Shown: one piece after another, positions 9,271 to 52,789 of the stretch
Layout: each line of letters opens with the position of its first letter
Position numbering within the stretch: the first letter of the stretch is position 1
DNA from: Convolutriloba macropyga
Lineage: Eukaryota
Direction of reading: 5' to 3'
NCBI RefSeq assembly: GCF_964194025.1
Contig: NC_134482.1
Location: forward strand, 38,874,001 to 38,938,000
DNA: 64,000 nt
Translations under genes and position numbers: made by a program
The notes under the pieces: model-generated
The model's input: the letters and a program-made list of their open reading frames with translations, nothing else
Told to the model about the DNA's origin: nothing
Database searches by the model: none

Positions 9271-9280
9271 ATCTTATTAT

Positions 9281-10935: not shown

Positions 10936-10939
10936 CATT

Positions 10940-15240: not shown

Positions 15241-15242
15241 GA

Positions 15243-20320: not shown

Positions 20321-20541
20321 TTACTGCCAGACGTTTCTGCATGCTAGACCTCCATCTTGTAAAACCGAAGAACCGTTCAGGAAATTCGCTTCATCGGATG
20401 CTAAGAATACAACCAACTTAGCCACATCTTCCCCGGTTCCGTTTCTCCCCAATGGAGTTAGTTTCCTAAGATTATCCCAATATGGCTCCACGACTTCTTT
20501 TGGAAGACCCATCCTCTCAACGAAATTTGTCTCAACGACTC
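20321..20541 (-). CDS. SDR paralog B, exon 3 (last); whole gene 36788-20321, 261 aa classical SDR oxidoreductase
   Basis: aaag|GA GTC GTT GAG ACA: (G)VVETNF...TPLGRNGTGEDVAKLVVFLASDEANFLNGSSVLQDGG...stop; 221 nt in all three paralogs. Confidence 0.9.
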
Positions 20542-20579
20542 CTTTGAGTATTTTTAACAGACAAGCAATTATTGACGAT

Positions 20580-20730
20580 CTACCCTAGACGAACTCCGAC
20601 GCTTATCTTGCAAGATCTTGCAAGATTCTTGCAAATGACACTTATCTTGCAAGATGCAAGATCCGGACGCCTATATTGCAAGAATCTTACAAGATCTTGC
20701 AAGATAGACGTCGAAAAATCTTAAAGAAAA
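20580..20730. mobile_element. MITE-like fragment built of TCTTGCAAGA palindromes; related patches near 36290-36350, 38160-38270 and 62260-62330
   Basis: Clustered TCTTGCAAGA palindromes; termini not resolved. Confidence 0.45.
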
Positions 20731-21451
20731 AATTGCAATTTTAAAGACCGATTAACTCAAAAATCATGTTCTCTTATGAGTTATCTTAAGACCACTCTTC
20801 AATCTTGGAGAAAAATATACTCTTATAATTTATGCTGTTTACATACTTGTCTTTGAGGTATCCATTGAAATAAAGTTCAATTTAAATTTGTAGAATGTCA
20901 ATCAGATTGAAATTTTATAAACACATCTCAAAACATATTTATGTAGACAGAACAAAAATTGGGAAAATTAATTCTGTAAAACTGAAATTTAAACAAAGCG
21001 TTAACAAAGCATATAAAAACGAAGCATAAAAGATTAATATAATGAGAACCCTGGAAGCGATCCTGAGAAGGAATACATTCTTCATGTAAGATTCTTGCAA
21101 CATTATAAATCAATCCTCTGTTATTATCTAAAGGTTGATTTTGAATACATTTCGGAAGATTCCTGCATGATCTGAAGTGACAAAGTTTTTCATCTGGATT
21201 CCTCGACTACTTTCAGAAGTCATTTAAATAATTTTTAAATCACGCTATGCGAAACATAATAGAAACTGTCAGTAATGAATGTACTGAAACAAACTACAGA
21301 AGTACAATTTTTCGCTGTAACGTTTAAAAAACGTACTTGTACAGTTTTTCAAAAAAGAACAAAAAAAACTTGAAACAACCGAGCTAAACAAAAAACAGAC
21401 AATGTTGCTCAGCAAAGAAAATTGAAACAAAAATTGCTTGTCAAAATTTCC

Positions 21452-21820
21452 CTGGGCTAATACTGTTAGCCCGAATCCCATTTTTTCCTTCTTCAATTGT
21501 AATACACCGTGTGAACATATCCAAGGCTGCCTTGCTCATACAGTAGAACGCGTGATTCGGTACCGGGTTTGTAGCAAGAACCGAGGAATTGTTCACAATA
21601 TTCCCTTTAGTTAGTCTCAAATACGGAATGCAAAGTTTGGTCAATTTGACAGCCATTTTGAGATTGATGTCAAAAACTGTTTCGTAAGAATCCATCGAGG
21701 GGTCAACAAGAGGTGCCCCGACTGACATTCCAGCATTGTTGAACAAAATGTCGATTTGTCCAAATTTATCGATAGTTTCTTTCACTATGTTTTCACACAC
21801 ACCGTCTGCTTGTAGATCAC
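21452..21820 (-). CDS. SDR paralog B, exon 2
   Basis: ttctgttcag|GT GAT CTA: (G)DLQADGVCE...ILFNNAG...NNSS...YCMSK...RANSISP(G); catalytic N-S-Y-K motifs; 369 nt; followed by a GG donor. Confidence 0.92.
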
Positions 21821-22586
21821 CTGAACAGAAAAATTGGCAAACATCTATAAGACGATTTAAAAGAATTTTATTTCAATATCAAAATGAAATTGCGTTTCAA
21901 TTATAAATTGAAAAATAGAAATGTTGAGTATCATTTGTGAGATTTGATGTTTTTGAGGACAACTTTTGCTTGTTTCGGGAGGAATCAATTGGCAAATATG
22001 AGATAATAATCTTTTTGCCGACAATTTTTGACAGTAAAGCTTCAGAAAGTAAATTGGAGAATTTTAGTTTTTTTGTTTGTTTAAAGGTTAATGAAACTGA
22101 ATTTTAAAAATTTTTGCCCCTTGCTAGATAGACATAGATCTAGACTTACTATAAAAATCTTAAAATCTGAAGAAAAAGAAAGGTTGCAGTACACAAAACT
22201 TTTTAATGATGTGGTATGTCTTAGTTCTACAATATTCTGCATGCACTAAACTGAACATTTTGATGACAGAACATTTATTAAGCTGTAATAACAAAAACCA
22301 AAACAATTTGTAGATGCAGTAGTTCATAAACAAATAGATTTAAGTGAAAAAGTTGTCGTCAAAATAAATTTTTGTTGTTCAATAAAACGTGATGCTGACA
22401 CTTAAATTGTTTATCTCTGATTGGTCATAAAAAGTTTTTTAACAGCAAGCTCAAATTTTCTTAGAAAATGTCATAGTCAGTAGTGGTCGGTTCGTACATT
22501 GGTAGATAATTAAAGCATCCTAATGCATCTCTTAGTAATACGGGCCGTAATTTTGACTACCAGCAGAGATAAATAAATATAAGAAA

Positions 22587-22920
22587 CCCGGGTCCAGCTT
22601 TTGTCAAAAAATAATGTAAGATTAGCGGTGAATAGCGCTGAAAAAAACTTTCTTTTATCTTTTAGCGTTAAGTGCGGTGAAAGCTGTAAATCTTTTTAGC
22701 ATTTGGGATTTTTAGCGGTGAAAATTTTTTTTTCACCGCATTCTGTTGGTACCGATGAAATTTTTTTTTTCACCGCTTAAGCGGTGAAAAAAAATTCACC
22801 GCTTGAATATTTTTTTTTCTACGCATTCATCGCGTTGAGCGCAAATCTTACATTTTTACTCAAATTCACCGCAAATCTTACATCTTTTAGCGATTTTTAG
22901 CGGTGACACCTCGACCCGGG
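22587..22920. mobile_element. MITE-like element with short TIRs and internal CACCGC/GCGGTG inverted motifs
   Basis: Left end CCCGGGTCCAG, right end CTCGACCCGGG; many internal inverted GCGGTGAA/TTCACCGC motifs. Confidence 0.65.
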
Positions 22921-23829
22921 AAAAAACTATTACTGTTAGCTGGGTCCCTTATTTTTTTGTTATACTTACCTGCAAAAAGGCTATTGTAATTTTGTATTGT
23001 AAAGATGCTAATAACGTTAAATCAGGCGGTTGCTCGAGCAATGTATGTTTTGAAAGGTTCAACAGAACGTCAGTGTTGACTAATTTTTCCTTTGTACATT
23101 TTGAACCAATCAGAAAAAGGCAAAATATTTGGAAGTTACACTTTTTTAATTGCAGAAGGTTATGAAGTCAAAAATATGTGGGTTGATGAAATGGACGCAT
23201 TCATTTCTGATTTTGAGAAATTTAATTGTATGTGTTCTAACACAAGTTGTTCAAAAGAAAATAAAAATTATTTAATCGAATTATTACGAATTGTCGGAGC
23301 ATTCAATTGGCCTGAATCATTAAATGAGTAGCACATACTTATTCTTGCCCCACTCTTGCTTTTGAGATTCCTGCTATGCAATAGCACAAAACTCTTTTGT
23401 GGTTTTATAAAAATTTGATTTACTGGAGCACACAAAATAATTTCATCTGTTTTCGATTGATGTTACTCACAAAAATCAGATTTCAATTATTGCATGAAAT
23501 TTTTCCTGTCAAAAACAGTTTATTTTTCAAATAAATTATTATTTGTATTGTTCGATATATTAATTAAGGGCAATTCCTAAGGTTTCTTGAAATTCTTTCA
23601 AATTTAACCTGTTATTATTTTTGTGTTTCAATTTAATGAAATAAGTAGCAATTTAGAATTGCAGAAAAAAATGATTTGAAAATAATGTGGGAAAAAATGT
23701 TCTTGATATGATGCTTCTTGAACAGATGCGCAGCGTCAAACCATCATTTGCAATGAAAAAAAAACTAACATACGGAAGAGCTTTTCTTTCTAGAATTTTT
23801 ACACAATTTTTGTTTCAAAAATTGCATAA

Positions 23830-25544
23830 TGTCATTGTTTCGAAGAAACAGCAGGAAACTTAGAAGTCTTCTCTGATTAAGTTTAAAAAACGAAAGCAGA
23901 ATTTACATGACGAACTCAGATGTTCTGTCGACAAAAGTTGGCCACAAAACTATAAACTTGAATCTTATTCTAATTTTGTCATGAATCTATCATGATGTTA
24001 TTGACCAATTGATCAGGAGTCAGAAGTCAAACTTTTTGAGTTTTGGAAATAAGATTTCAACCTCCAACTGATAAACTTGATTTTACCAAGATCATGAATA
24101 ACTCACATGAAAAGTAGCGAAAATGTGAAAACAGGTCGTGGACTCGTAACTAAAATCTTTTCACTTGTCAATAATGTAAAATATTGTTAGCTAATCTAAA
24201 TTTTTTCTGTATTTTTTCGGATAGATAAATACGAGCTAATTTTTTTCTGGTTCATTTTCATTTCAAAAGTGAACTTATTGAATTTTTTGACAATGATGTC
24301 CAGACCACCAACAGATACAGAAATTTTGGATCTAGGGCTTGCAGAACCAACTACAGCGTGGATTATGAGTTTTGTTACGAAATGTTGACCAGAGAAGAAA
24401 GAGGACAGGATCAAAACCGATGGTTTTACAGTGGACCTACAGTTAACCAATCTCGTTTTTTTTTATGTGCGGGCAAGATGCAATTGTTAAAATTAGGAGC
24501 CTAATGAGCCCTGGGAATCTGACAGACACTCCGATTAAAGAAATCAAATTGGCGAAGCAAAATTATGATTTTCCTAAAGAGATAATAGTAGGGGCAGAAA
24601 AGGTTAGTTTCTGTTCATATTAGAAGGTGTAGGAAAATGAGACGTTGATTTGCTAGCACGTTTTAGAGAATAAATACGCTATTGTGACTGCGAAAGTTTC
24701 AACAAAATGGTCAACCATATTGCGGGGCGCTGAAGCTAAACTTAGACTAATATAGGGTTTTAAAGCAAAAGCAGTAATATGGATTGGTGGAATGATTGAG
24801 AGCTTGCAGTTCAGATGTCAAGAAACGGCCTTTGGAAAAGTTTCACCAGAAACTAAGCGCATTATAGTGCAAAAACAAATTGTATACAGCCTCAAAACGA
24901 CCACTCTAAAACCAAACTAAAACTTTATAGCTATTAAAACCAACAAAATGATAGCTAAGTGTTGAGTTATGCCACATTCTAGTAGACATTGCCAGTGCTA
25001 ATTAAAAAATGCACCAACTGTGCAAAGCAGGGACACTTTCATTTTTTTCGAAAAGCAAACAAAATTTGACTGCTATTAAAAGCAACAATAAAGGCATTAG
25101 GTTTTTAGGCAAGCCACATTCTAGTAGACATTGTCCAGTGCTAATTAAAAAATGCAATAACTGTTAAAAGGAGGGATACTTCTTAATAATGTGTGGAAGC
25201 AAAACCCAGCCATATTCAGGTAAGCATAAAAAGAAAAAAGCGGTTGCGAAGAAAGAAATCTATTCCTCTTTTCAAGCTTTTCTAATAGAAGCGGAGATGA
25301 GAAGATAATTTACTAGATAACAAATCTTTAACATGTCTGGGCCATGGGAATATATTACAAGAAGTTTCTGAAGATTAAAATACTGCAGGCAGACTTAGGT
25401 GCGGATAGCAAAGTGATTTCATTTACAATGTGGACTGTGCTTAGAAGACTCTTGTTATATGGTGAGATAGGACAACCCAAATTTTGTGATGCTTATCAAT
25501 TAACGCTTCTGTGATCACTTATTTGTGACGTCGATTGGAAAGGA

Positions 25545-25601
<57 letters not shown>

Positions 25602-28533
25602 TCACACTCATAAACAACTAGCACTTGTGCAGTCTGAGACAGAATTTGGATTGTTTAGAAGAGACCTTTTACCTAACCACAGTGTAAACAGGGTCACCAA
25701 ACGTTTGCCTGTTTTGAAGGGTTACAAAGCCCATGTGAAGCTGAAACCAGAATCAGAACCAATGTTCTACAAAGCCATAATAATACCTTTAAGACAAGGT
25801 TAGAGAGAAGCTGGAGAAGTTGGTGAAGAACAGAGAATCCTTGATCCGGTATAGCCAAGAAGAGTCACTAATTCATCTTCAGTGGTGTGGTAGAGAAGCG
25901 TGAGTGAACAGCTGAGACTTTGTGTGGATTTGAAAGTGCATATCAAAGGCAAAGTCATGGATGATTGTTATCCAAAATCAGACATGGATACGATCTTCCA
26001 CAATGTCCATGCGGCCTCATGGTTCGGCAAAATCAATCTCTCAAATGCCAACTATCAAATTGACGACGGCAAAAGACATAGGCACAATCAACAAACATTT
26101 GGGACTGTTCAATATGCGCCGACTACATCAGGGATCAAAAAATTTTTCAATCTTCCAGAGTTGCATCGAATCAACACTCAAAGGAATGAAAAATGTTGTG
26201 ATTTTTCATGACCATGTGTTGGTCTATTGAAATACCAGATTGGCAATGGAATGCTTCAAGAGAAAAAGTTACTTCGTGAGGAAAACATTACTATTACTGA
26301 GAAAAAAACTAACTCAAAAACAGTCGATAGCATTAATTTTTTTGGACACTTCATTTCAATAGAAGGAATAGCACCAGATACCAATCAGGTTTAAGAAATT
26401 TTTTTAAAAAAATAGTGTAGTAGCACTAACTAACAACAAACAACTCAACCCGTTTGTTGTGCTAGCAAATTTTTACGGAAGAATGATTCCTATTTTTGCA
26501 ACATCTATGCTGCCCTAAAATGACATGAGAAATAGTAATTTCTCATGGAACAAATACACCGAAAAGCTTTCAATGTCAAAGAAATGAATTATGTACTAAC
26601 ACATTTGTACAGCCATAAGTTTTGCCAAAAGATGCAACAGCTACTACTGACGCCTCTGAAAAGCCATTGGTGGGGTTCTTTCAAAAGAAGGACATGCAGT
26701 TACATTTGTATCAAAAAATTTGACGCTGGTGCAAAACTACTAAAAAATAAAACGAGAAGCACTGCCGATTGTCTTCACGGTCACAAGATTAAAGCAGTTC
26801 CTTCTTGGAAGACAATTTACCCCACAGACGGACCAAAAAACCACTCAACTATCTTTTTGCACCAGACGTTGAGATCCAGAAGACAGCATCAGCTAGAATC
26901 ACAACTTGGGAAATTGCACTATATGGGTTTCGACTTTGAGTTGACGTACACGCCAGGAGAGCAAATACCCTACGCAGATGCATTGAGAAAAATGGGTTTA
27001 GATGATGTCGAATCCGACAACAATCGAGTGTGCTTCGCAATCAATCTTATCGACCAAAACTACGACACTTGAATTTGGCAAAAATTGCATGAGTCGCATC
27101 CTGGGAAAAATGAAAACATGGCCTTAGTCAAAATAATAGCACGCTGGCCTGGCATAAACCAAGACGTTCAAACATTTTTTTAAGAAATTCCCTAATTGTC
27201 AAGTGAACGGGCTTAGCCTGGGAAAAACAGTCTCCGCGTGGCCAAAAGCCAAAGTTTAGCAAGAGCTTCAAATGGACTCGGGTTATGTTAAGGTCCAAAG
27301 CAATATCCATGTAATTGTTCATTTGGGTTCTGACTGGATGGTAGCTTTCCCCCGCGTGAAGTAGAACAACAAAAACAGTCAAAACATATCTTACTTAAAT
27401 TTTTGCAAGATTCCGAATACCCAGAATTTTAGTATCTCATAATGGCTCTAAAGTTCTAAGGGGCGATCTTTAAAAAAGAACAAATCATTGGGAATTAAGA
27501 AAATGGAGTCATCCGTCTATCTTCTAAGAGCTAATGGACAGTGAAGCGGGCACTTCAAGCGTGGAGTTCTAATCGTGCCTTTTTAAATGGAGCATTCCCG
27601 CATAAGGGCATTGATGACACATTGCAACACTTCAAAAGCAAAGGGCAAATTTCCAGTTGAACTTTTATTGGAACGCACAGTGAGACAACCAGCAGTTACC
27701 GAATTTGACTTCTGCTAAACCATTCTATTCAAAGCCAATGAAAAAAGAGGCAGAGAATTCCCGGTGCCTTCAACAATAGAGAGGGCTAGAACACCTCTTT
27801 CATACAACCGAAAAACTCAATTGGGACTATTCGAGTGAGCAAAAATCAAATTCCGAAACTAAACGAAGACAATGTGAAACCAGTGAGGAAGACCATAGCT
27901 CAATCAGAACCACAAGTTCTGAACACACATGTGAGACCTTCATATCAAGCCAAGCGTCTGCAGCCACATCAACTGCAGAGCAATCTCAATCCTAATCATC
28001 AGAGCTTTTACGAGCATCAATAGGAATTAGAAAACAACCCTACAGATTTGGAACGCCTCTACCCAAAAATCTGGCTTAAAAAAGAGGGAGGACGTGATGG
28101 TTTTGGAGAAATATCAAGAAACTTTATTGTTGTTTCGATAAATATTCGCCAGTAAACTAAATTTGAATACTATTCTAACTTTGTCTTGGCGCTATCATTG
28201 CCTTATTGGCCCATTAATCACGTGTCGGAAGTAAAAATTCTTTGAGCTATGGCAATTTGATTTCAAACTCCAACTGATGAACTCAATTTTACCAACATTA
28301 TGAAGGATTCTCATGAATATTACCGACAATAGAACATAGGGTCCGTGACTCGGAACTGAAATCTTTTCGCATGGTAATCATGTAAAATATTTTTTGCTAA
28401 TTTAAATATCCTCTGTTTATTTTTGTATAGATAATTACTATAAATAAGAGCTAATTTTTGTATATTTTCAAATCCCAGTTTAATTTAAATTTGAACGTAT
28501 TGAACTGTTGAACCGTGTTATCGACCACGACAC
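23830..28533 (+). mobile_element. Decayed full-length Ty3/Gypsy LTR retrotransposon inside SDR-B intron 1
   Basis: Diverged LTR pair ~23830-24312 and 28095-28533, with a PPT (AAAAAGAGGGAGGACG) before the 3' LTR TG. Gag remnants include CPVLIKKCTNCAKQGHF zinc-knuckle repeats. RT remnants: LRLCVDL...YP...FGKINLSNANYQI and GLF..RL..G..IFQ, with YxDD decayed to FHDH. RNase H remnants TTDAS and FDFELTYTPG..IPYADAL; integrase remnants LHESHPG and WPGINQDV. Many stops and frameshifts. Confidence 0.88.
25547..25598. repeat. (CA)n microsatellite (duplicated at ~30983-31042)
   Basis: Direct read. Confidence 0.95.
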
Positions 28534-29884
28534 ATGAAGTCGAAAAAAGACTTTATACTCGAGTGTCATCATCTGGAGAAAGCAACTCAATGTTGGTGTC
28601 AAGAAAACACTGTTTCACTTTTTCTTCAGTCAAATGGTGCATCAAAAATTAGCAAGCTCATTTACCTTTTCTGTAAAGTCATCCAACTTAAATGGACTCC
28701 AATTTAATCATTTTCATGGTTAAATTGTTGCTCCTTTCACTCATTCTGTTTTTTTCCATTTAGTCAGCAAAGCTTATTACAATTAAAGAATTTGAATTGT
28801 TTTGTCGCGCTGTGTTTTTTTAAGTTCTGTGTACACATTTTCATGATTTTTGAAGTCAAATTGGAGTAGTAATTTTGGTCACGCCGAAACACGAAATGGA
28901 GCAAAAAGGCGAGTGGTTTTGCGGCGTGAAATTGTTTGCTCTAATTTTAAAATAGAGTGACAAAACGGTGTTTGAACAACAATTCGCTTTGTCGCTAGTG
29001 GTTTTTTTGTTCACATGCGGCTATTTCACTTTGATTTTTACTGTTTTTTTAAATTTTTTTTTGATTGGATATTTTTTCTAATTGGTTTTCCCACTCCATT
29101 CATAGTTCATTCGAGACCTAGTTTTTGTTCGAACTTAATTTTGTTTTCGCGCTAGCGGTTTTTTGTTCCCATACGGCATATTGACCTTATTTTTTGGTTT
29201 TGTTTTCTTTTTTATCTGTTTTGATTAGAAATGGTTTTTCCAATTCACTCATAGTCCGTTCTAAGTTTAGTTGTTTGTTTATTCTGTTAAAATTCTTTGA
29301 ATTGTACTTCGGCACTTGTCCTGCTATGATTTTATGTTTCTGCTGAAATTTTGGATAGCCAAGATAGACCAGTACTAAATTTTTCCATTCAATATCTTGA
29401 ACCCAAAGCTCATGCTCAAAAAGTTAAATTTATTTTTTTAGTTAAGTATTAATTTCTGGAAAAGTAATTGTTTAATTTCTGACATGTTGTTCATCTCCTT
29501 TCACATTTAATTTTTCAATTGAATATGTGATTATATCTTGTATTTGTGATGTATTTGGCCTGTTTTTAAAACAAAAACCAAAAGTTTCATGGTATACCTT
29601 TAGCCAGTTTTTGGGTACGTTTTTGGAAAAATTATAAGAGTTTGGGATAATGGGGACACTTGACAAAATTTGGTATATCATAGCAAGATCATGTTACCCG
29701 CACCTAACGCTTAGCTAATATCTGTACTGATTCAGAACAATTTCAGAGAAATTTTGATTTTCAGTACAGATTCAGAACAATATCAGAATAGTTTCTGCAT
29801 CGATTCTGAAACCTTTCTGGTTCAGAGCAAAATTCAGAATCAGTGTTCTCTGCATTTCCTTTGAATCAGTGTTCTCTGCATTTC

Positions 29885-30155
29885 CTTGTGTTAGAACACA
29901 TACAATTAAATTTCTTAAAATCAGACATGAATGCGTCCGTTTCATCAACCCGCATATTTTTGACTTCATAACCTTCTGCAATTAAAAAAGTGTAACTTCC
30001 AAATATTTTGCTTTTATCTGATTGGTTCAAAATGTACAAGGGAAAAATTAGTCAACATTGACGTTCTGTTGAATCTTTCAAAACATACATTGCTCGAGCA
30101 GCCACCTGATTTAACGTTATTAGCATCTTTACCATACAAAATTACAATAGCTTTT
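29885..30155 (-). repeat. Inverted copy of ~22975-23246 at the duplication junction
   Basis: CTTGTGTTAGAACACA...CAAAATTACAATAG is the reverse complement of CTATTGTAATTTTG...TGTGTTCTAACACAAG. Confidence 0.9.
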
Positions 30156-30174
30156 TTATAATGCAAGAAGAAGT

Positions 30175-31006
30175 TGTACACAGCCTAAAAACGACCACTC
30201 GAAAACCAAACTAAAACTTTATAGCTATTAAAACCAACAATATGATAGCTAGGTGTTGAGTTATGCCATATTCTAGAGGACCGTGTCCAGCGCTAAGTAA
30301 AAAAGGCAACAACTGTGCAAAGGAGGGACAATTTCATTTTCTTCAAAAACCAAACAAAATTTGACTGCTATTAAAAGCAACAATAAAAGCATTAGGTTTC
30401 AGGCATGCCACATTCTAGTAGACATTGTCCAGTGCTAATTAAAAAAATGCACCAACTGTGCAAAGCAGGGACACTTTCATTTTTTCGAAAACCAAACAAA
30501 ATTTGATTGCTATTAAAAGCAACAATAAAGGCATTAGGTTTTTAGGCAAGCCATATTCTAGTAGACATTGTCCAGTGCTAATTAAAAAATGCACTAACTG
30601 TTAAAAGGAGGGATACTTTTTAATAATGCTTGAAGCAAATCCCAGCCATATTCAGGTAAACATAAAAAGAAAAAAGCTGTTGCGAAGAAAGAAAACCATT
30701 CCTCTTTTCAAGCTTTTCTAATAGGAGCGAAGATGAGAAGATAATTTACTAGATAACAAATCTTTAACATGTCTTGGCCATTGGAATATTTTACGAGAAA
30801 TTTATGAAGATTAAAATAATGCAGGCGGACTCAGGTGCAGATAGCAAAGTGATTTCATTTACAATGTGGACTGTGCTTAGAAGACTCTTGTTATAAGTTA
30901 ATATAGGACAACCCAAATTTTATGATGCTTATCAATTAAAGCTTCTGTGATCACTTACTTGTGACGTCGAGTGGAAAGGAAGCACACCCACACACACACA
31001 CACACA

Positions 31007-31045
<39 letters not shown>

Positions 31046-33977
31046 TCACACTCATAAACAACTAGTACTAGTGCAGTCTGAGACAGAATTTGGATTGTTT
31101 AGAAGAGACCTTTTACCTAACCACAGTGTAAACAGGGTCACCAAACGTTTGCCTGTTTTGAAGGGTTACAAAGCCCATGTGAAGCTGAAACCAGAATCAG
31201 AACCAATGTTCTACAAAGCCATAATAATACCTTTAAGACAAGGTTAGAGAGAAGCTGGAGAAGTTGGTGAAGAACAGAGAATCCTTGATCCGGTATAGCC
31301 AAGAAGAGTCACTAATTCATCTTCAGTGGTGTGGTAGAGAAGCGTGAGTGAACAGCTGAGACTTTGTGTGGATTTGAAAGTGCATATCAAAGGCAAAGTC
31401 ATGGATGATTGTTATCCAAAATCAGACATGGATACGATCTTCCACAATGTCCATGCGGCCTCATGGTTCGGCAAAATCAATCTCTCAAATGCCAACTATC
31501 AAATTGACGACGGCAAAAGACATAGGCACAATCAACAAACATTTGAGACTGTTCAATATGCGCCGACTACCTCAGGGATCAAAAAATTTTTCGATCTTCC
31601 AGAGTTGCATCGAATCAACACTCACAGGAATGAAAAATGTTGTGATTTTTCATGACCATGTGTTGGTCTATTGAAATACCAGATTGGCAAGTGAATGCTT
31701 CAAGAGAAAAAGTAACTTCGTGAGGAAAACATTACTATTACTGAGAAAAAAACTAACTCAAAAACAGTCGATATCATTAATTTTTTTGGACACTTCATTT
31801 CAATAGAAGGAATAGCACCAGATACCAATCAGGTTTTAGAAATTTTTTTAAAAAAATAGTGTAGTAGCACTAACTAACATTAAACAACTCAACCCGTTTG
31901 TTGTGCTAGCAAATTTTTACAGAAGAATGATTCCTATTTTGGCAACATCTATGCTGCCCTAAAATGACATGGGAATTAGTAATTTTTCATGGAACAAATA
32001 CACCGAAAAGCTTTTAATGTCAAAGAAATGAATTATGTACTACCACATTTGTACAGCTATACATTTTGCCAAAAGATGCAACAGTTACTACTGACGCCTC
32101 TGAAAAGCCATTGGTGGGGTTCTTTCAAAAGAAGGACATGCAGTTACATTTGTATCGAAAAATTTGACGCTGGTGCAAAACTACTAAAAAAATAAAACGG
32201 GAAGCACTGCCGATTGTCTTCGCGGTCACAAGATTCAAGCAGTTCCTTCTTGGAAGACAATTTACCCTACAGAAGGACCACAAAACCACTCAACTATCTT
32301 TTTGCACCAGACGTTGAGATCCAGAAGACAGCATCAGCTAGAATCACAACTTGGGCAATTGCAGTATATGGGTTTCGACTTTGAGTTGACGTACACGCCA
32401 GGAGAGCAAATACCCTGCGCAGATGCATTGAGAAGAATGGGTTTTGTTGATGGCGAATCTGACAACAATCGAGTGTGCTTCGCAATCAATCTTATCGACC
32501 AAAACTACGACACTTGAATTTGGCAAAAATTGCATGAGTCGCATCCTGGGAAAAATGAAAACATGGCCTTAGTCAAAATAATAGCACGCTGGCCTGGCAT
32601 AAACCAAGACGTTCAAACATTTTTTTAAGAAATTCCCTAATTGTCAAGTGAACGGGCTTAGCCTGGGAAAAACAGTCTCCGCGTGGCCAAAAGCCAAAGT
32701 TTAGCAAGAGCTTCAAATGGACTCGGGTTATGTTAAGGTCCAAAGCAATATCCATGTAATTGTTCATTTGGGTTCTGACTGGATGGTAGCTTTCCCCCGC
32801 GTGAAGTAGAACAACAAAAACAGTCAAAACATATCTTACTTAAATTTTTGCAAGATTCCGAATACCCAGAATTTTAGTATCTCATAATGGCTCTAAAGTT
32901 CTAAGGGGCGATCTTTAAAAAAGAACAAATCATTGGGAATTAAGAAAATGGAGTCATCCGTCTATCTTCTAAGAGCTAATGGACAGTGAAGCGGGCACTT
33001 CAAGCGTGGAGTTCTAATCGTGCCTTTTTAAATGGATCATTCCCGCAAAAGGGCACTGATGACACATTGCAACACTTCAAATGCCGAGGGCAAAATTCCA
33101 GTTGAACTTTTATTGGAACGCACAGTGAGACTACCAGCAGTTACCGAATTTGACTTCTGCTAACCCATTCTATTCAAGGCCAATGAAAAGACGCAGAGAA
33201 TTCCCGGTGCCTTCAACAATAGAGAGGGCTTGAAAACCTCTTTCATACAACCCAAAAACTCAACTCGGACTATTCGAGTGAGCAAAAATCAAATTCCGAA
33301 ACTAAACGAAGACAATGTGAAACCAGTGATGAAGACCATAGCTCAATCAGAACCACAAGTTCTGAACACACATGTGAGACCTTCATATCAAGCCAAGCTT
33401 CTGCAGTCACATCAACTGCAAAGCAATCTCAATCCTAATCATCAGAGCTTTTACGAGCATCAATAGGAATTAGAAAACAACCCTACAGATTTGGAACGCC
33501 TCTAACCAAAAAGCTGGCTTAAAAAAGAGGGAGGACGTGATGGTTTTGAAGAAATATCAAGAAACTTTATTGTTGTTTCGATAAATATTCGCCAGTAAAC
33601 TAAACTTGAAAACTATTCTAACTTTGTCTTGGCGCTATCATTGTCTTATTGGCCCATTAATCACGGGTCGGAAGTAAAAATTCTTTGAGCTATGGCAATT
33701 TGATTTCAAACTCCAACTGATGAACTCAATTTTACCAACATTATGAAGGATTCTCATGAATATTACCGACAATAGAACATAGGGTCCGTGACTCGGAACT
33801 GAAATCTTTTTGCATGGTAATCATGTAAAATATTTTTTGCTAATTTAAATATCCTCTGTTTATTTTTGTATAGATAATTACTATAAATAAGAGCTAATTT
33901 TTGTATATTTTCAAATCCCAGTTTAATTTAAATTTGAACGTATTGAACTGTTGAACCGTGTTATCGACCACGACACA
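30175..33977 (+). mobile_element. Second, 5'-truncated copy of the decayed Gypsy element (gag 3' end, pol, PPT, 3' LTR ~33538-33977), produced by the segmental duplication
   Basis: Shares disabling lesions (e.g. FHDH, the same RT frameshift) with copy 1 and extends into the same 3' flank. Confidence 0.88.
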
Positions 33978-35159
33978 TGAACTCGAAAAAGGACTTTATA
34001 CTCGAGTGTCATCATCTGGAGAAGGCAACTCAATGTTGGTGTCAAGAAAACACTGTTTCACTTTTTCTTCAGTCAAATGGTGCATCAAAAATCAGCAAGC
34101 TCATTTACCTTTTCGGTAAAGTCATCCAACTTAAATGGACTCCAATTTAATCATTTTCATGGTTAAATTGTTGCTCCTGTCATTCATTCTGTTTTTTTTC
34201 CATTTAGTCAGCAAAGCTTATTACAATTAAAGAATTTGAATTGTATTGGGGCGCTGTCTTTTTTTATGTTCTGTGTACACATTTTCATGATTTTTAAAGT
34301 CAAATTGGAGTAGTAATTTTGGTCACGCCGAAACACGAAATGGAGCAAAAAGGCGTGTGGTTTTGCGGCGTGAAATTCTTTGCTCTAATTTTAAAATAGA
34401 GTGACAAAACGGTGTTTGAACAAAAATTCGCTTTCTTGCTAGTGGTTTTTTGTTCACATGCGGCTATTTCACTTTGATTTTTACTGTTTTTTCAATTTTT
34501 TTGATTGGATTTTTTTCTAAATGGTTTTCCCACTCCATTCATAGTTCATTCGAGACCTAGTTTTTGTTCGAACTAAATTTTGTTTTCGCGCTAGCCGTTT
34601 TTTTGTTCCCATACGGCATATTGACCTTAATTTTTGGTTTTGTTTTCTTTTATATCTGATTTGTTTAGAAATGGTTTTTCCAATTCACTCATAGTCCGTT
34701 TTAGGTTTAGTTGTTTGTTCATTCTGTTAAAATTCTTTGAATTGTACGTTGGGACTTGTCCTGCTATGATTTTATATTTCTGCTGAAATTTTGGATAGCC
34801 AAGATAGACCAGTACTAAATTTTTCCATTCAATATCTTGAACCCAAAGCTCATGCTTAAAAAGTTAAATTTATTTTTTTAGTGAAGTATTAGTTTCTGGA
34901 AAAGTAATTGTTTAATTTCTGACATGTTGTTCATCTCCTTTCACATTTAATTTTTCAATTGAATATGTGATTATATCTTGTATTTGTGATGTATTTGGCC
35001 TGTTTTTAAAACAAAAACCAAAAGTTTCATGGTATACCTTTAGCCAGTTTTTGGGTACGTTTTTGGAAAAATTATAAGAGTTTGTGATAATGGGGACACT
35101 TGACAAAATTTGGTATATCATAGCAAGATCATGTTACCCGCACCTAACGCTTAGCTAAT

Positions 35160-36085
35160 ATCTGTACTGATTCAGAACGTTTTCAGAGAAATTTTGATTT
35201 TCAGTACTGATTCAGAACAATATCAGAATATTTTCTGCATCGATTCTGAAACCTTTCTGGATCAGAGCAAAATTCAGAATCAGTGTTCTCTGCATTTCCT
35301 TTGAATTAGAGGAAATTTCAGAATTCGTTTCTGACTTGCCTCTGAATCAGAATGAAAATCAGAATTTTTTCTCAACCCTGCAGAGAAACACAATCAAAAA
35401 TTTCATCATTTTTTAAGCGTTTTAATTAGTTTTTGGAACAAAATGCCAACAACTTTAGCCGAAAAAAGAAATAACATCTTTCCTGATGTATTCTGGTATT
35501 GTGATGCAAATTGATATCGACTCTTCGTACAGTTCCTGATTCTTTGACTATTTTTGGTTTTATACCAACTGTAGGGGCTATGTGAACTGTGAATATGCAA
35601 AAGATGTAGCCACCATACGTTTATTTGAGAATAATTGTCTTCATAAAGAGGTTGTCACTGCCGGTCCCTAGCCCGGAATGAAAAGGGAGGAGGGTTTAAA
35701 CCACACAGAGCTTATCGAAAAATCTCAAAAAGTCAGTTTTGACTTGGCTTGAGAAAGTTTCCGACAACCCATTATATAAATCTCTTCATTTTCTACAGGT
35801 ATTATTTGAAATTATATAATTAAGGACCTGAGAGCGAAAACAAGGGTAAAACATAGCTTGGCTCACGAACATAGTTATGAATTTACCCTATATCAGAGAA
35901 AAATCGGAGTCTGATTCAGAGCCTGATTCAGAGTCTGAATCAGAGTCTAAATCAGATAAAATTCTGATTCTGATTCAGACCCCTGATTCAGAGTCTGATT
36001 CAGACAAATTCAGGGCAAAATGTGACCTGAATCAGACTCTGAATCAGTACTGATAACGTTCTGAATTTCGTTCTAATTCAGTACT
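35160..36085. mobile_element. Foldback/MITE-like element with TCTGATTCAGA/TCTGAATCAGA repeats in both arms and unrelated central DNA
   Basis: Left GTACTGATTCAGAACGTT versus right TCTGAATCAGTAC and AACGTTCTGAAT. Confidence 0.55.
35659..35694 (+). ncRNA. Twister-ribozyme-like fragment (3' half: P4/L4 and GGAGGG)
   Basis: TGCCGGTCCCTAGCCCGGAATGAAAAGGGAGGAGGG closely matches the twister segment UGCCGGUCCCAAGCCCGGAUAAAAGUGGAGGG; the cleavage-site strand was not found. Confidence 0.5.
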
Positions 36086-36592
36086 CAATTTTCCTTGGAG
36101 TCAAATTTATCCAATAGGGAAATTCACTTGTTCTGATAAGCAGCTGAAATTCTTGTGAAGGTTGCGGAAACAGATGAAAATATCTGACAATGTTCTACAA
36201 ATACTGAACTCAAATTGCCCTATTGAGGAACTTTTTGAGATCAAATTAGTCAATTCAATGCTGACCCTAGTAACGATGGAATTGAATATTTGTAAGAAAG
36301 CATCTTGCAAGATTATGAACTTGCAAGAAAGAAGCTTGCAAGATTATGAATTCACTTGGAAACGAAAATGAAACGAGAACCGAAAGACAAAAATTCTTAC
36401 AGTTTGAGATACCTCTACAAGGAGTTATGGGCATGTCTTTTTTCATGAAATCTGTTTGTTGACGTCATAGTAAACAAAATAAAACGATGATATATTTAGC
36501 AATAGTAGTTCGCCAGAGAACCAACAACCAAACAAATTTTGTTCTGAACTGCATCAGATAAGAGCTCGGCTATTAAGAAAATGAAAACTAAC

Positions 36593-40568: not shown

Positions 40569-41128
40569 CTTTAAATGGTTCAGAACAGGTAAGCAATCAT
40601 TGAATTGTACAGTGTAGGATTTTTATTTAATTTCCTCCCCATGAGAAAGAACGTTCGCATAATTTGAGTTGCGCTGTCAATTATAGTTGGCAACAAAAAT
40701 GAGGCACGTAATCTTAATAAGGTGAAAATTAATTGTCAAGTTTGTTTGTTTAATTGTTAACATTGTTTTACGAAGAAGAAGACATACTGACAACTTTTAT
40801 AACGCGTAAAAGAATTTAGAATTGACAAGCATTTCAAAAATTGGCTAAAAATACCCAATTTTGTTGTAAAAAGTGGAGGCAAGTTATGGTCATCTCAACT
40901 CCTCAACTCGAGGTCCTCGTTCAAAATTGCTTCTATTAGGTCTTTCAAAAACGCACGGAAGAGAGGCGAGGTGCGTGGAAAATTCCATGGAAAATGATCA
41001 ACTGCTAAGTGACCAGATGTTTGTCTAAATCTGATTTTCAGCGAGCCGCATATGATTTTAAGTAAACCTGAAGACGGTCGGTTTTGAAAACCTTATTGAA
41101 TATTCAATGATTGCATGTCAAAACTTCC

Positions 41129-41497: not shown

Positions 41498-44333
41498 CTA
41501 AACCGAAATAAAGTTTTATATCCGAAGATAGGTTTTTTCTTAGGATTTTGATTTGGTCACGAATTGTATTTTTATACAAAAATCAAATCTGATTCGAATG
41601 AAGCAAAGATGGTCAAAGATGGCCTCAAACGAGGTCATAGATATTGTGCAATTTTTTGACCGGGGATCCTTCTGAACTATGTAAAGCAATCTGTTGAAAT
41701 CAGTTGAAAATTGGGCTCCATTTCTGTTTTTTTTTTCAATTGTCAGCTTAATGCGCTGAATAGCAATGATAAACTATGGTATCAAAAAACTAGGTACATC
41801 TAGAAAATTTTTCAAAAGCTTCACAAACTTTAAAAAAAAATACAATGTTTTGGATTCAGATCATCAATCTAGTAAGGAGTCATTAGGTTTCAGCTTTTTC
41901 TGAAAATTTTTCTAAAAACTGCGTGTCTCTGTGTAACTGTTGCTCCAAACTTGTTCATAATTTTTCAGATTCTGATCGGGACTATTTATTGACAATTCTT
42001 GTACCTCCAGCACCTTTTTTTGAACATGTTTGGCTTGGATCGTCGAAATGCAGAGCAGCCTCATTTTGAAAAAGAAGTCTTAAAGGTGCATTTTTTGTAA
42101 TTTTTTGTCTTTAAGCGAAAAAGAAGACTTAATTTTTTGCGAAAAAGAAGACTTAAAGGTGCATTTTCTGTGTTTGAAAGTCTGCCAAACAGTTTCCGCC
42201 CCTCTGATTGAATTGCACCCAAAAGTATAGATGATTGCTTGTCCGAACTAGATTTTGTTGTCTGGCCTGTTACTTTTTTGTTATCCTTTGTATGCTTGCT
42301 GTGTACAAGATCTTGATTCTGAGCTGCGCTGCTTTTGTTAGTTCAGCGCCGACGACAGTAAAACAACCACGTTTTCTGTTAAAAACCGAGAAAAAGAGAA
42401 TGAAATCCAGGTTAAAATTTCAACATTTCACGCCTTTTTTTCATGCCTAAGCGCAGATTAAAATTTTCGAGCAAAAGTTACGCTTGAAGAACCAAACTTG
42501 TACGTTGCTTTTTAATACTGAACTGAATTTTGAAAGAAAAGGTCTCTGAAATTACGTTTTCAGCGCTTTCAATTCTTTTCTCACGTTGGGTTCAATCCTT
42601 TTTTTAGCCCTTTTCAAGCTGATTTTTTAGCCTGTTTTCACGACACACGCTAGAAAACGTGAATCTGTTTTCATTATCCCTTTTGATATCGTTTCAAAGG
42701 AAAAGGACTGATATGCGCAAACAGATGATGCAGTAAAAAATTGTAAGGAATTGTAATCATTACTCTATTGCGCAATGAGCAAAATTATTTTTACATTTTG
42801 TCTTGTTTGCGAATTTTCTGCAAAATTTTAATTAAGAGATGTTTATGAGCTGAATTTATTGTAAAGCAATATAACGCTGATCATTTGCATATTTTGGTTT
42901 TTAAAGCTCGTGTCTGGCAGTAATTGGAACTTTTTAAGAGCGCAATCTGATATTTAATTCATCAGATTTTCAGAGAAAGTGTAACATAGTTTTGATTACG
43001 TGAGCAAAAAACAGCTCTTCACTAGTAAAAGGACTTCAAAAATGGCAAATAAAGACTTCAAAAGGAATTCAAATGCTGTTGACTTTCTAGCTAGGACAAT
43101 TGTCGGAAATAAAGTCCATTGTTCAATTTTGCTCAGCAAAGAAGTAAAAACGCTAACTGTGGTTATTCTTAGACAATATTCTTGTCTTCTCCAAAACCAA
43201 TTTTTTTCAATTATGTATTAATCTGGTTATATTCCGTCTTTTTGTTGATACCTAAAAAATACATAGGCTTCCATTTCTTTTAGTTTTAGTCAATCGTATG
43301 AGTAACAGAATTCAGCATTTTTTCTTCCTTCTTTAAGGAAAATAACACCAAAGAAATTTTTACGCTTCATATAACTATGATTTTATTTTTGTTTCAGCAT
43401 GCGAATGCTGTTTCTCCTTTGTGTTACTATTTGTTATATTATGGCAAGTAAATAAAATTTTGTACACTCGTTATAATTAACATTTTTCGTCGCATAATGT
43501 ATGTTGCTCTTTCCTTAGCATCTTAAAAGAATTCTTTTTTAAAATAAAAAATAGTAACAAATACATACAAAGCATTTTTGCTGTTTATCAATCCGCAGCA
43601 TTTCGGAAAACTAATTGGGTTTTGCTTGCTTAAAACTCCGGAAAATTGAATATATCATTTTTTTCTTAAAGTTTCATTGACATCAATTCACTCTTTTACT
43701 TAATTCTCTTTTAAAGCGCCTGTTAGTAAAGTCACATATTTTAACGGTTTCATATAAAGAAGATTTAATCAGACTGCGGATTTCTAAGAATTTTTTTTCT
43801 TCTTCTAAGGGATAATGTTTCAAATATGTAATTATCTTTTCAATTCCTTGCATTGAATCATTTGGTTCTCAGCAAACATTTTTTTGTAAGTCTTGTAGAA
43901 AACTTTTTTTGTCAAATATTTAATATTGAGTGTTTTAATTTGTCTTTCTATGCTCCAACGGTTACCCGTAGATGAAATAGGATCATAACTGTTAATTTTC
44001 AGTGGTTTATTTTTCAGCGGATAGCGTAGATAACGTTAAGGTTAAAGTGCAGAGTTTGCAACAAAACTTGGTATTGACTAGTTCAGATCGTGCCTTCAAA
44101 TTGTGATTTTTTTTCAAAATCAACAAATAAAAAGCTAAATTCTCTACTAGGCTACTACTTAAAGGTTCGTGCGTTGAAAAGTTTTTAAAACCTAAATGTC
44201 TCAATTTTTTAAAGCGTTTTACCAATGCTTCTGAGGTATGGAATTTTGATCCCTTCAGTCTTTGGCTTTGCTCAAATAAAAAAGAACGTTTGGTTACAAA
44301 GTCAAAAGTCAAAAAATTTTACGTTTATCAAAC

Positions 44334-51400: not shown

Positions 51401-51895
51401 CCATTAATCACTTGGAAACTTTATGAGTCGAAAAGAAAAAGTTGTGTTAGAACCTAAAATTTGTTTTCAACTGAAAAACAAATTTCAATACTAGATTCCT
51501 GACATTAGAATCAAACAAGAAATTTCCCCAAACTATAGAGAAAGACATTCTTCTTTTCAGTTTTTAAACTAACTCCTTGTTTGTGGAAGGTTAGTTGTTC
51601 TACATGGCGTGACTCTCAATTTGAGAAAACGAATTAGACTTAATAATGTCGGGCTGACGTATGAAAACGTATTTTTTAAAGCGGCTTTTTAAATACGCGA
51701 ATAAATTTGAACTTCAATCCAAACGGAAAAATTCAACTCGTTTTTTTATATACGCGAATAAATTTGAAATTCAATCCAAAATCTGTAATGCCTAAAATAT
51801 GCCAAAATTTTTCCAATAATCATGACTAAACTCCACTTCGTTTTTCAAAGACGATATGTTAGAGAAACATCACTGAGTCCTGAAAACAATCATCC

Positions 51896-52612: not shown

Positions 52613-52789
52613 CTGAACGAATGATATGAAACTAATTTATTTGAAAGTAAGAAACGTTTTTATAAAAAATGGTCAAACAAAAAAGAACTTTTTCAATAAT
52701 ATGAATTTGTCAGCATAATTCTTTTTGTATTTATTTTAACGAATGGATCAAAAATGGATGGTTTGCCAAGTTGAGCTCCCAGAATAAAA

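What the first reader, a model, noticed from the sequence alone, without database searches (positions are those of the whole stretch)
20542..21451. The non-canonical introns have base-paired ends; pairing is kept while sequence changes
Seen (pre-mRNA sense): in B, GACAAGCAATT 9 nt after the donor pairs with AATTGCTTGTC 18 nt before the acceptor end (+ strand 21432-21442 and 20560-20570). In C, GCAATCATTGAAT pairs with ATTCAATGATTGC (13 bp perfect; 41102-41114 and 40593-40605). In D, a different sequence, TTGTTTTCAGGACTCAGT, pairs with ATTGAATTCTGAAAACAA (10 bp perfect, ~18 bp with G.U and one mismatch) 5-6 nt from each splice site, across 3.4 kb of repeat-filled intron. I see no such stems in the three GT-AG intron 1s. 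Inference: the terminal stem juxtaposes the splice sites and replaces the GT and polypyrimidine signals, i.e. structure-guided splicing, probably domesticated from transposon TIRs. This is the best candidate for an undescribed system in the window.
Basis: partly seen in the sequence, partly recalled or inferred. Interest (0 to 1): 0.9.

Follow-up and report, generated by a model that had tools for sequence, protein, structure and literature searches.

The report
Stem-closed non-GT introns in an acoel
In a cluster of duplicated dehydrogenase genes of the acoel worm Convolutriloba macropyga, one intron starts with GG or GA instead of GT, has a weak pyrimidine tract, and has ends that base-pair. 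Matching mutations on both sides have kept the pairing, so it most likely helps the cell remove the intron.

Summary
Observation confirmed and extended. The window is Convolutriloba macropyga DNA with tandem SDR genes on the minus strand.

- **The three stems are real.** They sit exactly where stated and beat chance (1/3000, 0/3000 and 21/3000 shuffles). The GT-AG first introns of the same genes show nothing.
- **Five more paralogs.** I fetched them from the same genome. All eight carry an intron at the same codon (NPG|xxxT, phase 1), and only a G[G/A]...AG junction is in frame in all eight.
- **The intron is removed in frame.** Exon 3 is under purifying selection (dN/dS 0.08-0.36), while synonymous sites are mostly saturated.
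- **The arms are conserved.** They remain recognisable: 83% of core cells pair, 7 of 12 core columns show changes on both sides, and each arm pairs better with its own partner than with other paralogs' arms (p≈4e-4).
- **Signals.** The junctions keep spliceosome-like AG|GRA...AG|G. The 3' T-tract is weaker than in intron 1 in 8/8.

Best reading: U2-type GR-AG introns whose splice sites are brought together by a selected long-range helix, probably of transposon (TIR) origin. A Symsagittifera roscoffensis homolog has an independent GA-AG intron with an 11-bp stem.

Relatives are known in Fritillaria, Euglena, copepod GA/GG donors and fish structured introns. I found no acoel report in the library. 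This scan noted the same class elsewhere in this genome. Splicing itself was not seen in RNA.

The parts
20542..21451 (-). SDR-B non-canonical intron (GG-AG reading, 910 nt) between exon 2 (...SISPG) and exon 3 (VVETNF...)
   Evidence: the junction is forced by a stop 3 codons into the intron and by the conserved PG-xxxT motif. The gene table with L001 lists a 261-aa product for this gene.
21432..21442 (-). B 5' stem arm GACAAGCAAUU (intron nt 10-20); extends to 14 of 15 positions paired
   Evidence: present in the whole-intron MFE with pair probabilities of about 1
20560..20570 (-). B 3' stem arm AAUUGCUUGUC (19-29 nt before the acceptor)
40569..41128 (-). SDR-C non-canonical intron (GG-AG, 560 nt)
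   Evidence: RefSeq model XP_075262557.1 (P0001) reads through into it and stops at SISPGKF*.
41102..41114 (-). C 5' stem arm GCAAUCAUUGAAU
40593..40605 (-). C 3' stem arm AUUCAAUGAUUGC
48466..51895 (-). SDR-D non-canonical intron (GG-AG, 3430 nt), same codon position as in B and C
51872..51889 (-). D 5' stem arm UUGUUUUCAGGACUCAGU; the inner part (CUCAGU) is homologous to the family's ancestral arm, the outer 10 bp are D-specific
48471..48488 (-). D 3' stem arm AUUGAAUUCUGAAAACAA
52049..52396 (-). SDR-D extra intron (GA-AG reading, 348 nt). It is a MITE with the 8-bp target duplication AGGAAATA and TIRs GGATATTTTCCG/CGGAAAATATGC, and it splits what is one 369-nt exon in the other paralogs.
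   Evidence: a second copy of the element lies at 54440-54725 (80% identity)
21821..36592 (-). SDR-B intron 1, canonical GT-AG with a T-rich tract; control without end pairing
41498..44333 (-). SDR-C intron 1, GT-AG control
52613..62445 (-). SDR-D intron 1, GT-AG control
20324..20541 (-). SDR-B last exon (72 codons plus the split Gly codon), intact and under purifying selection
21452..21820 (-). SDR-B exon 2 (369 nt)

Best explanation
These are real introns of a tandem family of short-chain dehydrogenase genes in the acoel Convolutriloba macropyga. They are most likely removed by the ordinary (U2-type) spliceosome, but they belong to a special class.

- The donor is AG|G[G/A]A instead of AG|GUA, and the 3' end has a weak pyrimidine tract.
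- A 10-17-bp helix forms between a segment starting 7-13 nt after the donor and a segment ending 5-22 nt before the acceptor. It closes off the 0.5-3.4 kb interior.
- The helix leaves the donor hexamer and the terminal AG single-stranded and holds the two splice sites next to each other. This (inferred) compensates for the weak donor and weak U2AF signal.

Shown: the helix is older than the eight-fold gene duplication and has been kept by purifying and compensatory selection.

Inferred: it began as the terminal inverted repeats of a DNA transposon that landed in the exon, as a younger MITE did in gene D. There, splicing from the AG|GA of one target-site copy to the AG|GA of the other would restore the reading frame.
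For: - **Organism and genes.** RefSeq model P0001 equals gene C exons 1-2, and the XP_ accessions belong to C. macropyga.
- **Same intron in eight paralogs.** B, C and D are in the window; A, Z, E, F and G are in L001-L004. All have the intron at the same codon and phase, none starts with GT, and all end with AG.
- **Only one junction works everywhere.** GR-AG at CAG|G is in frame in all eight. The nested GC/GT sites used by some Gnomon models add 3-27 residues inside the PG-xxxT motif. By my own reading of the sequences, the shared GC site would be out of frame in A and G.
- **Exon 3 is functional.** It is intact in all eight, with dN/dS 0.08-0.36. dS exceeds 1 or is incalculable for every pair except B-C and F-G. 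So the intron is removed in frame and the duplication is old.
- **RefSeq agreement.** The model of A (261 aa, no insertion) uses the GA-AG junction, and B's product is also 261 aa.
- **Arms are conserved.** Mean pairwise identity is 0.60 and 0.53 in the arms against 0.35 and 0.27 deeper in the intron. B and C interiors are unalignable while about 20 nt at each end are 85-89% identical.
- **Covariation.** 80 of 96 core cells pair. Changes on both sides occur in 7 of 12 core columns. Percent paired and the covariation score are reached by 0 of 2000 column shuffles, and slid registers give 26-46% pairing.
- **Own partner fits best.** Cognate arms give a mean helix of 13.25 against 10.2 for non-cognate arms, permutation p=3.5e-4. 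Energy is -20.0 against -14.4, p=7e-4.
- **Comparison with intron 1.** The helix is longer than in the first intron of the same gene (seven GT-AG, one GC-AG) in 8/8, and T content at -3..-25 is lower in 8/8.
- **Whole-intron folding.** The terminal helix is in the MFE for 6 of 7 introns folded, with pair probabilities of about 1.
- **Independent cases.** S. roscoffensis homolog intron 2 is GA-AG with the direct repeat AGGAAA and an 11-bp perfect stem, while its other two introns are GT-AG. D intron 2 is a MITE with a TSD and TIRs.
- **Junction features match known GA/GG donors.** The copepod pattern is obligate exon AG and A at +3 (PMC5714493).
Against: - No RNA data were available, so neither the exact junction nor the lariat was seen. 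RefSeq models are indirect evidence.
- Gnomon chose other, canonical nested sites for four paralogs. I read these as artefacts but cannot exclude them as real isoforms.
- The stem alignment was anchored by hand with the pairing in view, especially for D. The eight sequences are related, so shuffle counts are not probabilities.
- G.U pairs (10) are not clearly commoner than A.C mismatches (7) in the core. There is therefore no strand-specific proof that the constraint acts on sense RNA.
- No branch site could be assigned. In D only 5 nt follow the helix.
- No repeat family carrying these arms was found in about 190 kb, so the transposon origin of this intron is inference.
Confidence: 0.6

Rival explanations
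1. The stems are functionless relics. They are the decaying terminal inverted repeats of the transposon that created the intron. Splicing depends only on the AG|GRA and AG signals and a permissive spliceosome.
For: TIR plus TSD introns of recent origin exist in the same gene and in S. roscoffensis. C's outer stem and B's inner stem show uncompensated breaks. F and G have only 10-11 pairs in the ungapped helix measure.
Against: The duplication is old (dS saturated) and the intron interiors are randomised. Both arms are nevertheless conserved above background. They also carry 7 columns with changes on both sides and pair best with their own partner. Neutral decay predicts no cognate advantage.
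Confidence: 0.12
2. The introns are removed by a non-spliceosomal, hairpin-dependent machinery, like the nonconventional introns of euglenids, which are released as circles.
For: Shared features are non-GT ends, a weak pyrimidine tract, an end-to-end helix and slidable junctions with short direct repeats. Pairing is essential in Euglena (PMC12501133).
Against: The Euglena code (N3-CDG ... CH'G-N5-6|R) is absent: positions +4..+6 are AAA, AAT, ATT, AGT, CAA or TGA. The helix distance to the junctions varies (7-13 and 5-22 nt). The junctions keep spliceosomal AG|G..A and AG|G in 7-8 of 8. The same genes use ordinary GT-AG introns.
Confidence: 0.1
3. The helix is selected for something other than splice-site juxtaposition. 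Examples are controlled intron retention, a binding site for a double-stranded-RNA-binding protein or editing enzyme, or stability of the excised intron.
For: Selection on pairing is shown, but its purpose is not. RefSeq has a read-through (retained-intron-like) model for gene C.
Against: The helix always flanks both splice sites at short distance and leaves the donor hexamer and the AG free. It goes with weak splice signals in 8/8. The same architecture appears in unrelated non-GT introns. This geometry is what a splicing role predicts.
Confidence: 0.1
4. Gene-model artefact: the real mRNAs use nearby canonical GT-AG or GC-AG sites, or these copies are pseudogenes.
For: Gnomon models of Z, F, G and an E-like copy use nested canonical sites.
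Against: B, C and D have stops 3-8 codons into the intron, and no in-phase GT/GC donor lies before the stop. The nested sites insert 3-27 residues into the conserved PG-xxxT motif. By my reading, the shared GC site is out of frame in A and G. All eight last exons are intact with dN/dS well below 1.
Confidence: 0.03

Closest known systems
GA/GG-donor (GV-AG) U2-type introns of the copepod Eurytemora affinis and of larvacean tunicates (PMC5714493; PMC13326754)
   Same: The donor has G at +1 and A or G at +2. The exon ends in AG (7 of 8 here), A is at +3 (8 of 8), and the 3' end is a normal AG. The introns are constitutive and needed for the full-length protein, and they break automated gene models.
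   Different: No terminal helix is mentioned in the copepod paper read here, and its acceptors are said to look like canonical ones. Here the T-tract is weaker and a conserved end-to-end helix is present.
MITE/introner-derived non-canonical introns (Fritillaria borealis, Amoebophrya, Polarella, Micromonas; review PMC11282704)
   Same: Terminal inverted repeats lie near both ends, and short direct repeats at the junctions make the boundary slidable. The intron is lineage-specific: it is absent at this site in the S. roscoffensis homolog. A clear MITE-made example lies in gene D.
   Different: Fritillaria mainly uses AG/AC and AG/AT with YAY triplets; here the ends are GR-AG. The SDR intron is old and single-origin, and no repeat family was detected. 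Here the pairing itself is shown to be under compensatory selection, which none of the papers I read reports for those systems.
Euglenid nonconventional introns (PMC12501133; PMC11282704)
   Same: Ends are non-GT, there is no pyrimidine tract, and the ends base-pair to bring the splice sites together. Junctions are slidable, and these introns coexist with conventional introns in the same genes. In Euglena the pairing is experimentally essential.
   Different: The Euglena motif CAG/CTG at fixed spacers (3 nt and 5-6 nt) is absent. The acoel junctions keep spliceosomal consensus. The Euglena machinery is unknown and its product is a circle, and neither point is known here.
Structure-dependent introns of teleost fish, with (AC)n/(GT)n ends (Lin et al. 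2016, PMC4691745); by my own recollection, also yeast introns with 5'ss-branchpoint complementary boxes
   Same: Complementary sequences near the two ends of a spliceosomal intron bridge the splice sites and lessen the need for the pyrimidine tract/U2AF2.
   Different: The fish stems are simple repeats in introns with normal GT-AG ends. Here the arms are unique sequences that co-vary, and the donor is non-canonical.

Membership tests
GA/GG-donor U2-type introns (E. affinis / tunicate GV-AG type) | Intron begins G then A or G (not T/C) and ends AG | tested here: met
   six start GG (D, C, B, Z, F, G), two start GA (A, E), and all eight end AG. It is the only reading in frame in all eight.
GA/GG-donor U2-type introns (E. 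affinis / tunicate GV-AG type) | Exon ends in AG and intron position +3 is A (PMC5714493) | tested here: met
   exon AG in 7/8 (C has TG); +3 A in 8/8
GA/GG-donor U2-type introns (E. affinis / tunicate GV-AG type) | Removed by the major spliceosome (lariat, branch point) | not testable with these tools
   No RNA data; no convincing branch site found by eye
MITE/introner-derived introns (Fritillaria type) | Terminal inverted repeats next to a target-site duplication at the exon junctions | tested here: inconclusive
   For the SDR NPG intron, inverted repeats are present. The only junction repeat is CAGG/AGG, which is also the splice consensus. D intron 2 clearly meets the feature: 8-bp TSD plus TIRs.
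MITE/introner-derived introns (Fritillaria type) | Many similar copies of the element in the genome | tested here: not met
   no other match to the arms (up to 2 mismatches) in the window plus six loci (about 190 kb), apart from the paralogs. The whole genome was not searched. D intron 2 has a second copy at 54440-54725.
MITE/introner-derived introns (Fritillaria type) | AG/AC or AG/AT termini with YAY triplets (PMC13326754) | tested here: not met
   the only readings that fit the window's B, C and D together are GG-AG and GA-GG
Euglenid nonconventional introns | Code 5'-N3-CDG ... CH'G-N5-6 | purine exon (PMC12501133) | tested here: not met
   +4..+6 is AAA, AAT, ATT, AGT, CAA or TGA. The helix starts at +7 to +13 and ends 5-22 nt from the acceptor.
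Euglenid nonconventional introns | Base pairing between the two intron ends | tested here: met
Euglenid nonconventional introns | Excision as a full-length circle by a non-spliceosomal machinery | not testable with these tools
   needs RNA experiments
U12-type (minor spliceosome) introns | Donor /RTATCCTT and branch site TCCTTAAC 10-15 nt from the acceptor | tested here: not met
   donors are GGAAAT, GGAAGT, GAAAAA and similar. Only C and D have a weak TTCTGAA near the 3' end.
Structure-bridged spliceosomal introns (teleost AC/GT class) | Complementary segments at both ends of the intron, with a reduced pyrimidine tract | tested here: met
   helix longer and T content lower than in intron 1 (seven GT-AG, one GC-AG) of the same gene in 8/8
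Structure-bridged spliceosomal introns (teleost AC/GT class) | Arms made of simple (AC)n and (GT)n repeats; GT-AG ends | tested here: not met
   unique-sequence arms; GR donors

The most novel reading that the evidence does not exclude
Convolutid acoels have a distinct, structure-dependent splicing mode. GR-AG introns with weak pyrimidine tracts are recognised only when a terminal helix pairs their ends. This requirement has been held by compensatory evolution for a very long time, and it lets DNA transposons that land in coding exons be spliced out precisely. It would be a bilaterian-animal counterpart of the Euglena nonconventional-intron code, possibly with its own helper factor.
Probability: 0.4. 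Interest if true: 0.8.

Novelty: new variant of a known kind. Interest (0 to 1): 0.62.

Why it matters
- **A possible function for transposon-derived stems.** Hairpin-ended non-canonical introns are usually read as fresh transposon scars. Here one such intron predates an eight-fold gene duplication, and its stem has been kept by compensatory substitutions. That argues the stem is a working splicing signal in an animal. The idea is directly testable with stem-breaking and restoring mutations and with existing RNA-seq.
- **How exonic transposon insertions might be tolerated.** The target-site copy AG|GA would serve as both donor and acceptor.
- **Gene annotation.** RefSeq models of this family are truncated (C) or carry false insertions (Z, F, G, an E-like copy). 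Acoel gene sets, which are widely used in debates on early bilaterian evolution, are probably damaged wherever this intron class occurs.

Tried and rejected
- RNAduplex energies of 60-nt ends against mononucleotide shuffles separated the classes only weakly (z -1.9 to -3). AT-rich ends form many loose duplexes. I used perfect-match and helix-length statistics instead.
- The WC+GU helix statistic gives false positives on T- or G-runs, for example S. roscoffensis introns 1 and 3.
- An Rfam scan of the window found nothing.
- A protein-atlas search gave no help with the organism. Identification came from the protein search.
- U12-type, Euglena-code and Fritillaria AG/AC readings were each tested on the eight junctions and not met.
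- The tRNA-endonuclease bulge-helix-bulge idea was rejected. The junctions lie 6-12 and 5-22 nt from the helix and keep AG|G.
- A mirtron-like small-RNA hairpin was rejected because the loops are 0.5-3.4 kb.
- Searching the window and loci for a repeat family carrying the arms gave only the paralogs and one probable chance match at 42229.
- G.U versus A.C asymmetry, as a test for sense-strand RNA constraint, gave no clear signal (10 vs 7).
- Direct transcript evidence: no transcript-derived protein of this species turned up for these genes in either protein search.
- I did not use the count of structure pairs, because a concatenated 5'+3' alignment cannot be given by reference. The same measures were computed in a script.

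Full report
**1. What the window is**

The window is AT-rich (about 33% GC) animal DNA. Stop-to-stop frames and tblastn show a tandem family of short-chain dehydrogenase/reductase (SDR) genes on the minus strand.
- Gene B: exon 1 at 36593-36788, exon 2 at 21452-21820, last exon at 20324-20541.
- Gene C: 44334-44532, 41129-41497, 40351-40568.
- Gene D: exon 1 near 62641, then 52397-52612, 51896-52048, 48248-48465.
- Gene A: only exon 1 lies in the window (15874-16071).

A protein search returned a RefSeq protein of Convolutriloba macropyga (XP_075262557.1). It equals exons 1 and 2 of gene C and then reads into the intron, ending SISPGKF*. The genome is therefore this acoel worm, chromosome OZ077313.1.

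**2. The observation**

The intron limits 20542-21451 are the GG-AG reading of a junction that can slide by 3-4 nt.

The non-GT status is forced.
- Reading on from exon 2 hits a stop after 3 codons in B and C and after 8 in D.
- No in-phase GT or GC donor lies before the stop.
- Joining at G|GG...AG|G gives complete 261-262-residue SDR proteins for B and C, with the conserved PG-xxxT motif intact.

The longest perfect complement between the first and last 50 nt is 11 (B), 13 (C) and 10 (D). These values are reached by 1, 0 and 21 of 3000 dinucleotide shuffles, and by 0.3%, 0.08% and 0.8% of random same-strand pairs from the window. The three GT-AG first introns of the same genes score 5-6, which is the chance level.

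**3. Extending the sample to eight paralogs**

The first protein search and its follow-up look-ups led to five more paralogs in the same genome: A and Z in L001, E in L002, F in L003, G in L004. A second search, with A's protein as query, returned the RefSeq models of several of them.

All eight genes have an intron at exactly the same place, after the first base of the Gly codon of N-P-G. None starts with GT: six start GG and two start GA. All end with AG.

The exon ends in AG in 7 of 8, and position +3 is A in 8 of 8. The acceptor is CAG|G or AAG|G. Apart from +2, these are spliceosomal junctions. They show the same peculiarities as the GA/GG donors of the copepod Eurytemora affinis: obligate exon AG and A at +3 (PMC5714493).

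**4. Is the intron really removed there?**

No RNA data could be reached, so the argument is evolutionary.
- The last exon is an intact 72-codon frame in all eight genes, with pairwise dN/dS of 0.08-0.36.
- Synonymous divergence exceeds 1 or is incalculable for every pair except B-C and F-G. The exon is therefore translated in frame in genes that have been separate for a long time.
- The RefSeq model of A (261 aa, NVNPG|LIGTPF with no insertion) uses the GA-AG junction, and B's product is also 261 aa.
- For Z, F, G and an E-like copy, Gnomon chose nested GC-AG or GT-AG sites. These add 3-27 residues in the middle of PG-xxxT. By my own reading of the sequences, the shared GC site would be out of frame in A and G.
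- Only GR-AG works in all eight, so I read those models as artefacts of a canonical-site preference. C's model is simply truncated.

**5. The stems in all eight**

Each intron has a helix of 10-17 pairs (WC plus G.U, at most one mismatch). It starts 7-13 nt after the donor and ends 5-22 nt before the acceptor. The donor hexamer and the terminal AG are always left unpaired.

Seven of the eight helices are built from one homologous pair of arms, roughly GCUCAGCAAUCAYUG and CARUGAUUGCUGAGC. D keeps a decayed version of this inner helix and adds a D-specific outer 10-bp helix.

When whole introns of 0.5-2 kb are folded, the terminal helix is part of the minimum-energy structure in 6 of 7 cases, with pair probabilities near 1. 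In A the probability is 0.55.

Compared with the first intron of the same gene (seven GT-AG, one GC-AG), the helix is longer in 8 of 8. The T content of positions -3 to -25 is lower in 8 of 8.

**6. Is the pairing selected?**

Three lines say yes.
- **Conservation.** The arms have mean pairwise identity 0.60 (5' arm) and 0.53 (3' arm), against 0.35 and 0.27 for the next 19 positions inward. The interiors of B and C cannot be aligned at all, while about 20 nt at each end are 85-89% identical. In the close pair F-G, the first 19 nt are identical apart from one indel, while the next ~80 aligned positions are only about 70% identical.
- **Covariation.** In the 12 core positions, 80 of 96 cells form a standard pair. 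Seven columns carry changes on both sides, for example C-G in A, Z, F, G and D against A-U in E, B and C, or U-A against C-G. Percent paired (83% against 71%) and the covariation score (0.46 against 0.26) are reached by 0 of 2000 column shuffles. Sliding the partner by 1-3 nt gives 26-46% pairing. Leaving out D changes little.
- **Cognate advantage.** Each 5' arm pairs better with its own 3' arm than with those of other paralogs: 13.25 against 10.2 pairs, permutation p=3.5e-4, and -20.0 against -14.4 kcal/mol, p=7e-4. Independent neutral decay of the two arms predicts no such advantage.

Caveats:
- I anchored the arm alignment by hand, knowing the pairing.
- The sequences are related, so the shuffle counts are not probabilities.
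- There are also uncompensated breaks, in C's outer part and B's inner part.
- G.U pairs are not clearly commoner than A.C mismatches (10 against 7), so the sense-RNA level of the constraint is inferred, not shown.
B and C share one ancestral stem and differ by one compensated pair plus several breaks.

**7. Origin**

The S. roscoffensis homolog (P0060, L005) has no intron at this codon, so the intron looks lineage-specific.
- That gene has another non-GT intron, GA-AG, flanked by the direct repeat AGGAAA. It has an 11-bp perfect stem, UCAAUUUCAUU/AAUGAAAUUGA. Its two other introns are GT-AG.
- In the window, gene D has an extra intron (52049-52396) that splits the exon which is continuous in all other paralogs. 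It is a MITE with the 8-bp target duplication AGGAAATA and TIRs GGATATTTTCCG/CGGAAAATATGC. A second copy lies at 54440-54725.
- In both young cases the duplicated target reads AG|GAAA. One copy can act as donor and the other as acceptor, and removal restores the coding sequence. This is the mechanism described for introners and Fritillaria MITE introns (PMC11282704).
- For the old SDR intron the junction repeat (CAGG) cannot be told apart from the splice consensus. No repeat family with its arms was found in about 190 kb. Its transposon origin is a reasonable inference, not a result.

**8. Mechanism**

- Shown: a conserved, co-varying long-range helix next to both splice sites, a non-U at +2, a weaker T-tract, and otherwise spliceosomal junctions.
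- Inferred: the helix shortens the effective distance between donor and acceptor/branch region. This makes up for poor U1 and U2AF signals. The same has been shown for fish introns whose structured ends replace the need for U2AF2 (PMC4691745) and, by my own recollection, for yeast introns with complementary 5'ss and branch-point boxes.
- Rivals:
  - A non-spliceosomal, Euglena-like route remains possible, but the Euglena code is not met (PMC12501133).
  - A pure relic explanation is contradicted by section 6.
  - Another function for the helix cannot be excluded.

**9. Novelty**

Hairpin-ended, transposon-derived non-canonical introns are known in Fritillaria, Amoebophrya, Polarella and euglenids. 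GA/GG donors are known in a copepod and in larvaceans.

The acoel genome papers I could read do not mention non-canonical introns. Library searches linking acoels with such introns found nothing. The library is incomplete.

New here are the combination GR-AG plus a closing helix in a bilaterian worm, and evidence from eight old paralogs that the helix is kept by compensatory evolution.

Earlier notes of this scan report the same class elsewhere in this genome (s1-217420, s1-250063, s1-220339, s1-214594). I did not test those claims. They agree with a genome-wide phenomenon.

**10. Limits**

I read no sequence corresponding to the window's N runs. From A's first intron in L001 I used only the first and last 60 nt.

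Noticed in passing
window 40351-44532 (gene C); L001:50809-53006 (Z); L003:8859-11330 (F); L004:8351-11104 (G): RefSeq gene models of this SDR family are damaged by the non-GT intron. C is truncated at SISPGKF*. Z, F, G and an E-like copy carry 3-27-residue insertions after NPG, because nested GC-AG or GT-AG sites were used.
   Followed up: yes
window 15874-16071, 36591-36788, 44332-44529, 62444-62641: Exon 1 of the paralogs is far more alike (88-100% protein identity to B) than the rest of the genes (D is only 47-63% identical to B in its later exons). This suggests gene conversion or much stronger constraint on exon 1.
   Followed up: no
window 25500-28050 and 30950-33500: Two near-identical copies of a retroelement-like block, about 5.4 kb apart, with broken pol-like frames and (CA)n runs, lie inside the 14.8-kb first intron of gene B.
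   Followed up: no
window 54440-54725: A second copy (about 80% identical) of the MITE that forms gene D's extra intron lies 2 kb upstream in D's first intron.
   Followed up: partly
L005:3726-4070 (Symsagittifera roscoffensis OY783241.1): The SDR homolog has a GA-AG intron with the 6-nt junction repeat AGGAAA and an 11-bp perfect terminal stem. The intron class is therefore not confined to Convolutriloba.
   Followed up: partly
L006:3001-3774: An intronless 257-aa SDR paralog (P0059) sits on another contig of the same ENA assembly that holds C. macropyga paralog copies.
   Followed up: no
L002:5928-10052: The first intron of paralog E is GC-AG, while the other seven first introns are GT-AG.
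   Followed up: no
L001:10001-46047, spanning window 1-16071: Gene A's first intron is about 34 kb. It spans the window's 160-bp satellite array, the N runs and the SGNH-hydrolase-like frame at 9389-9892 on the opposite strand.
   Followed up: no
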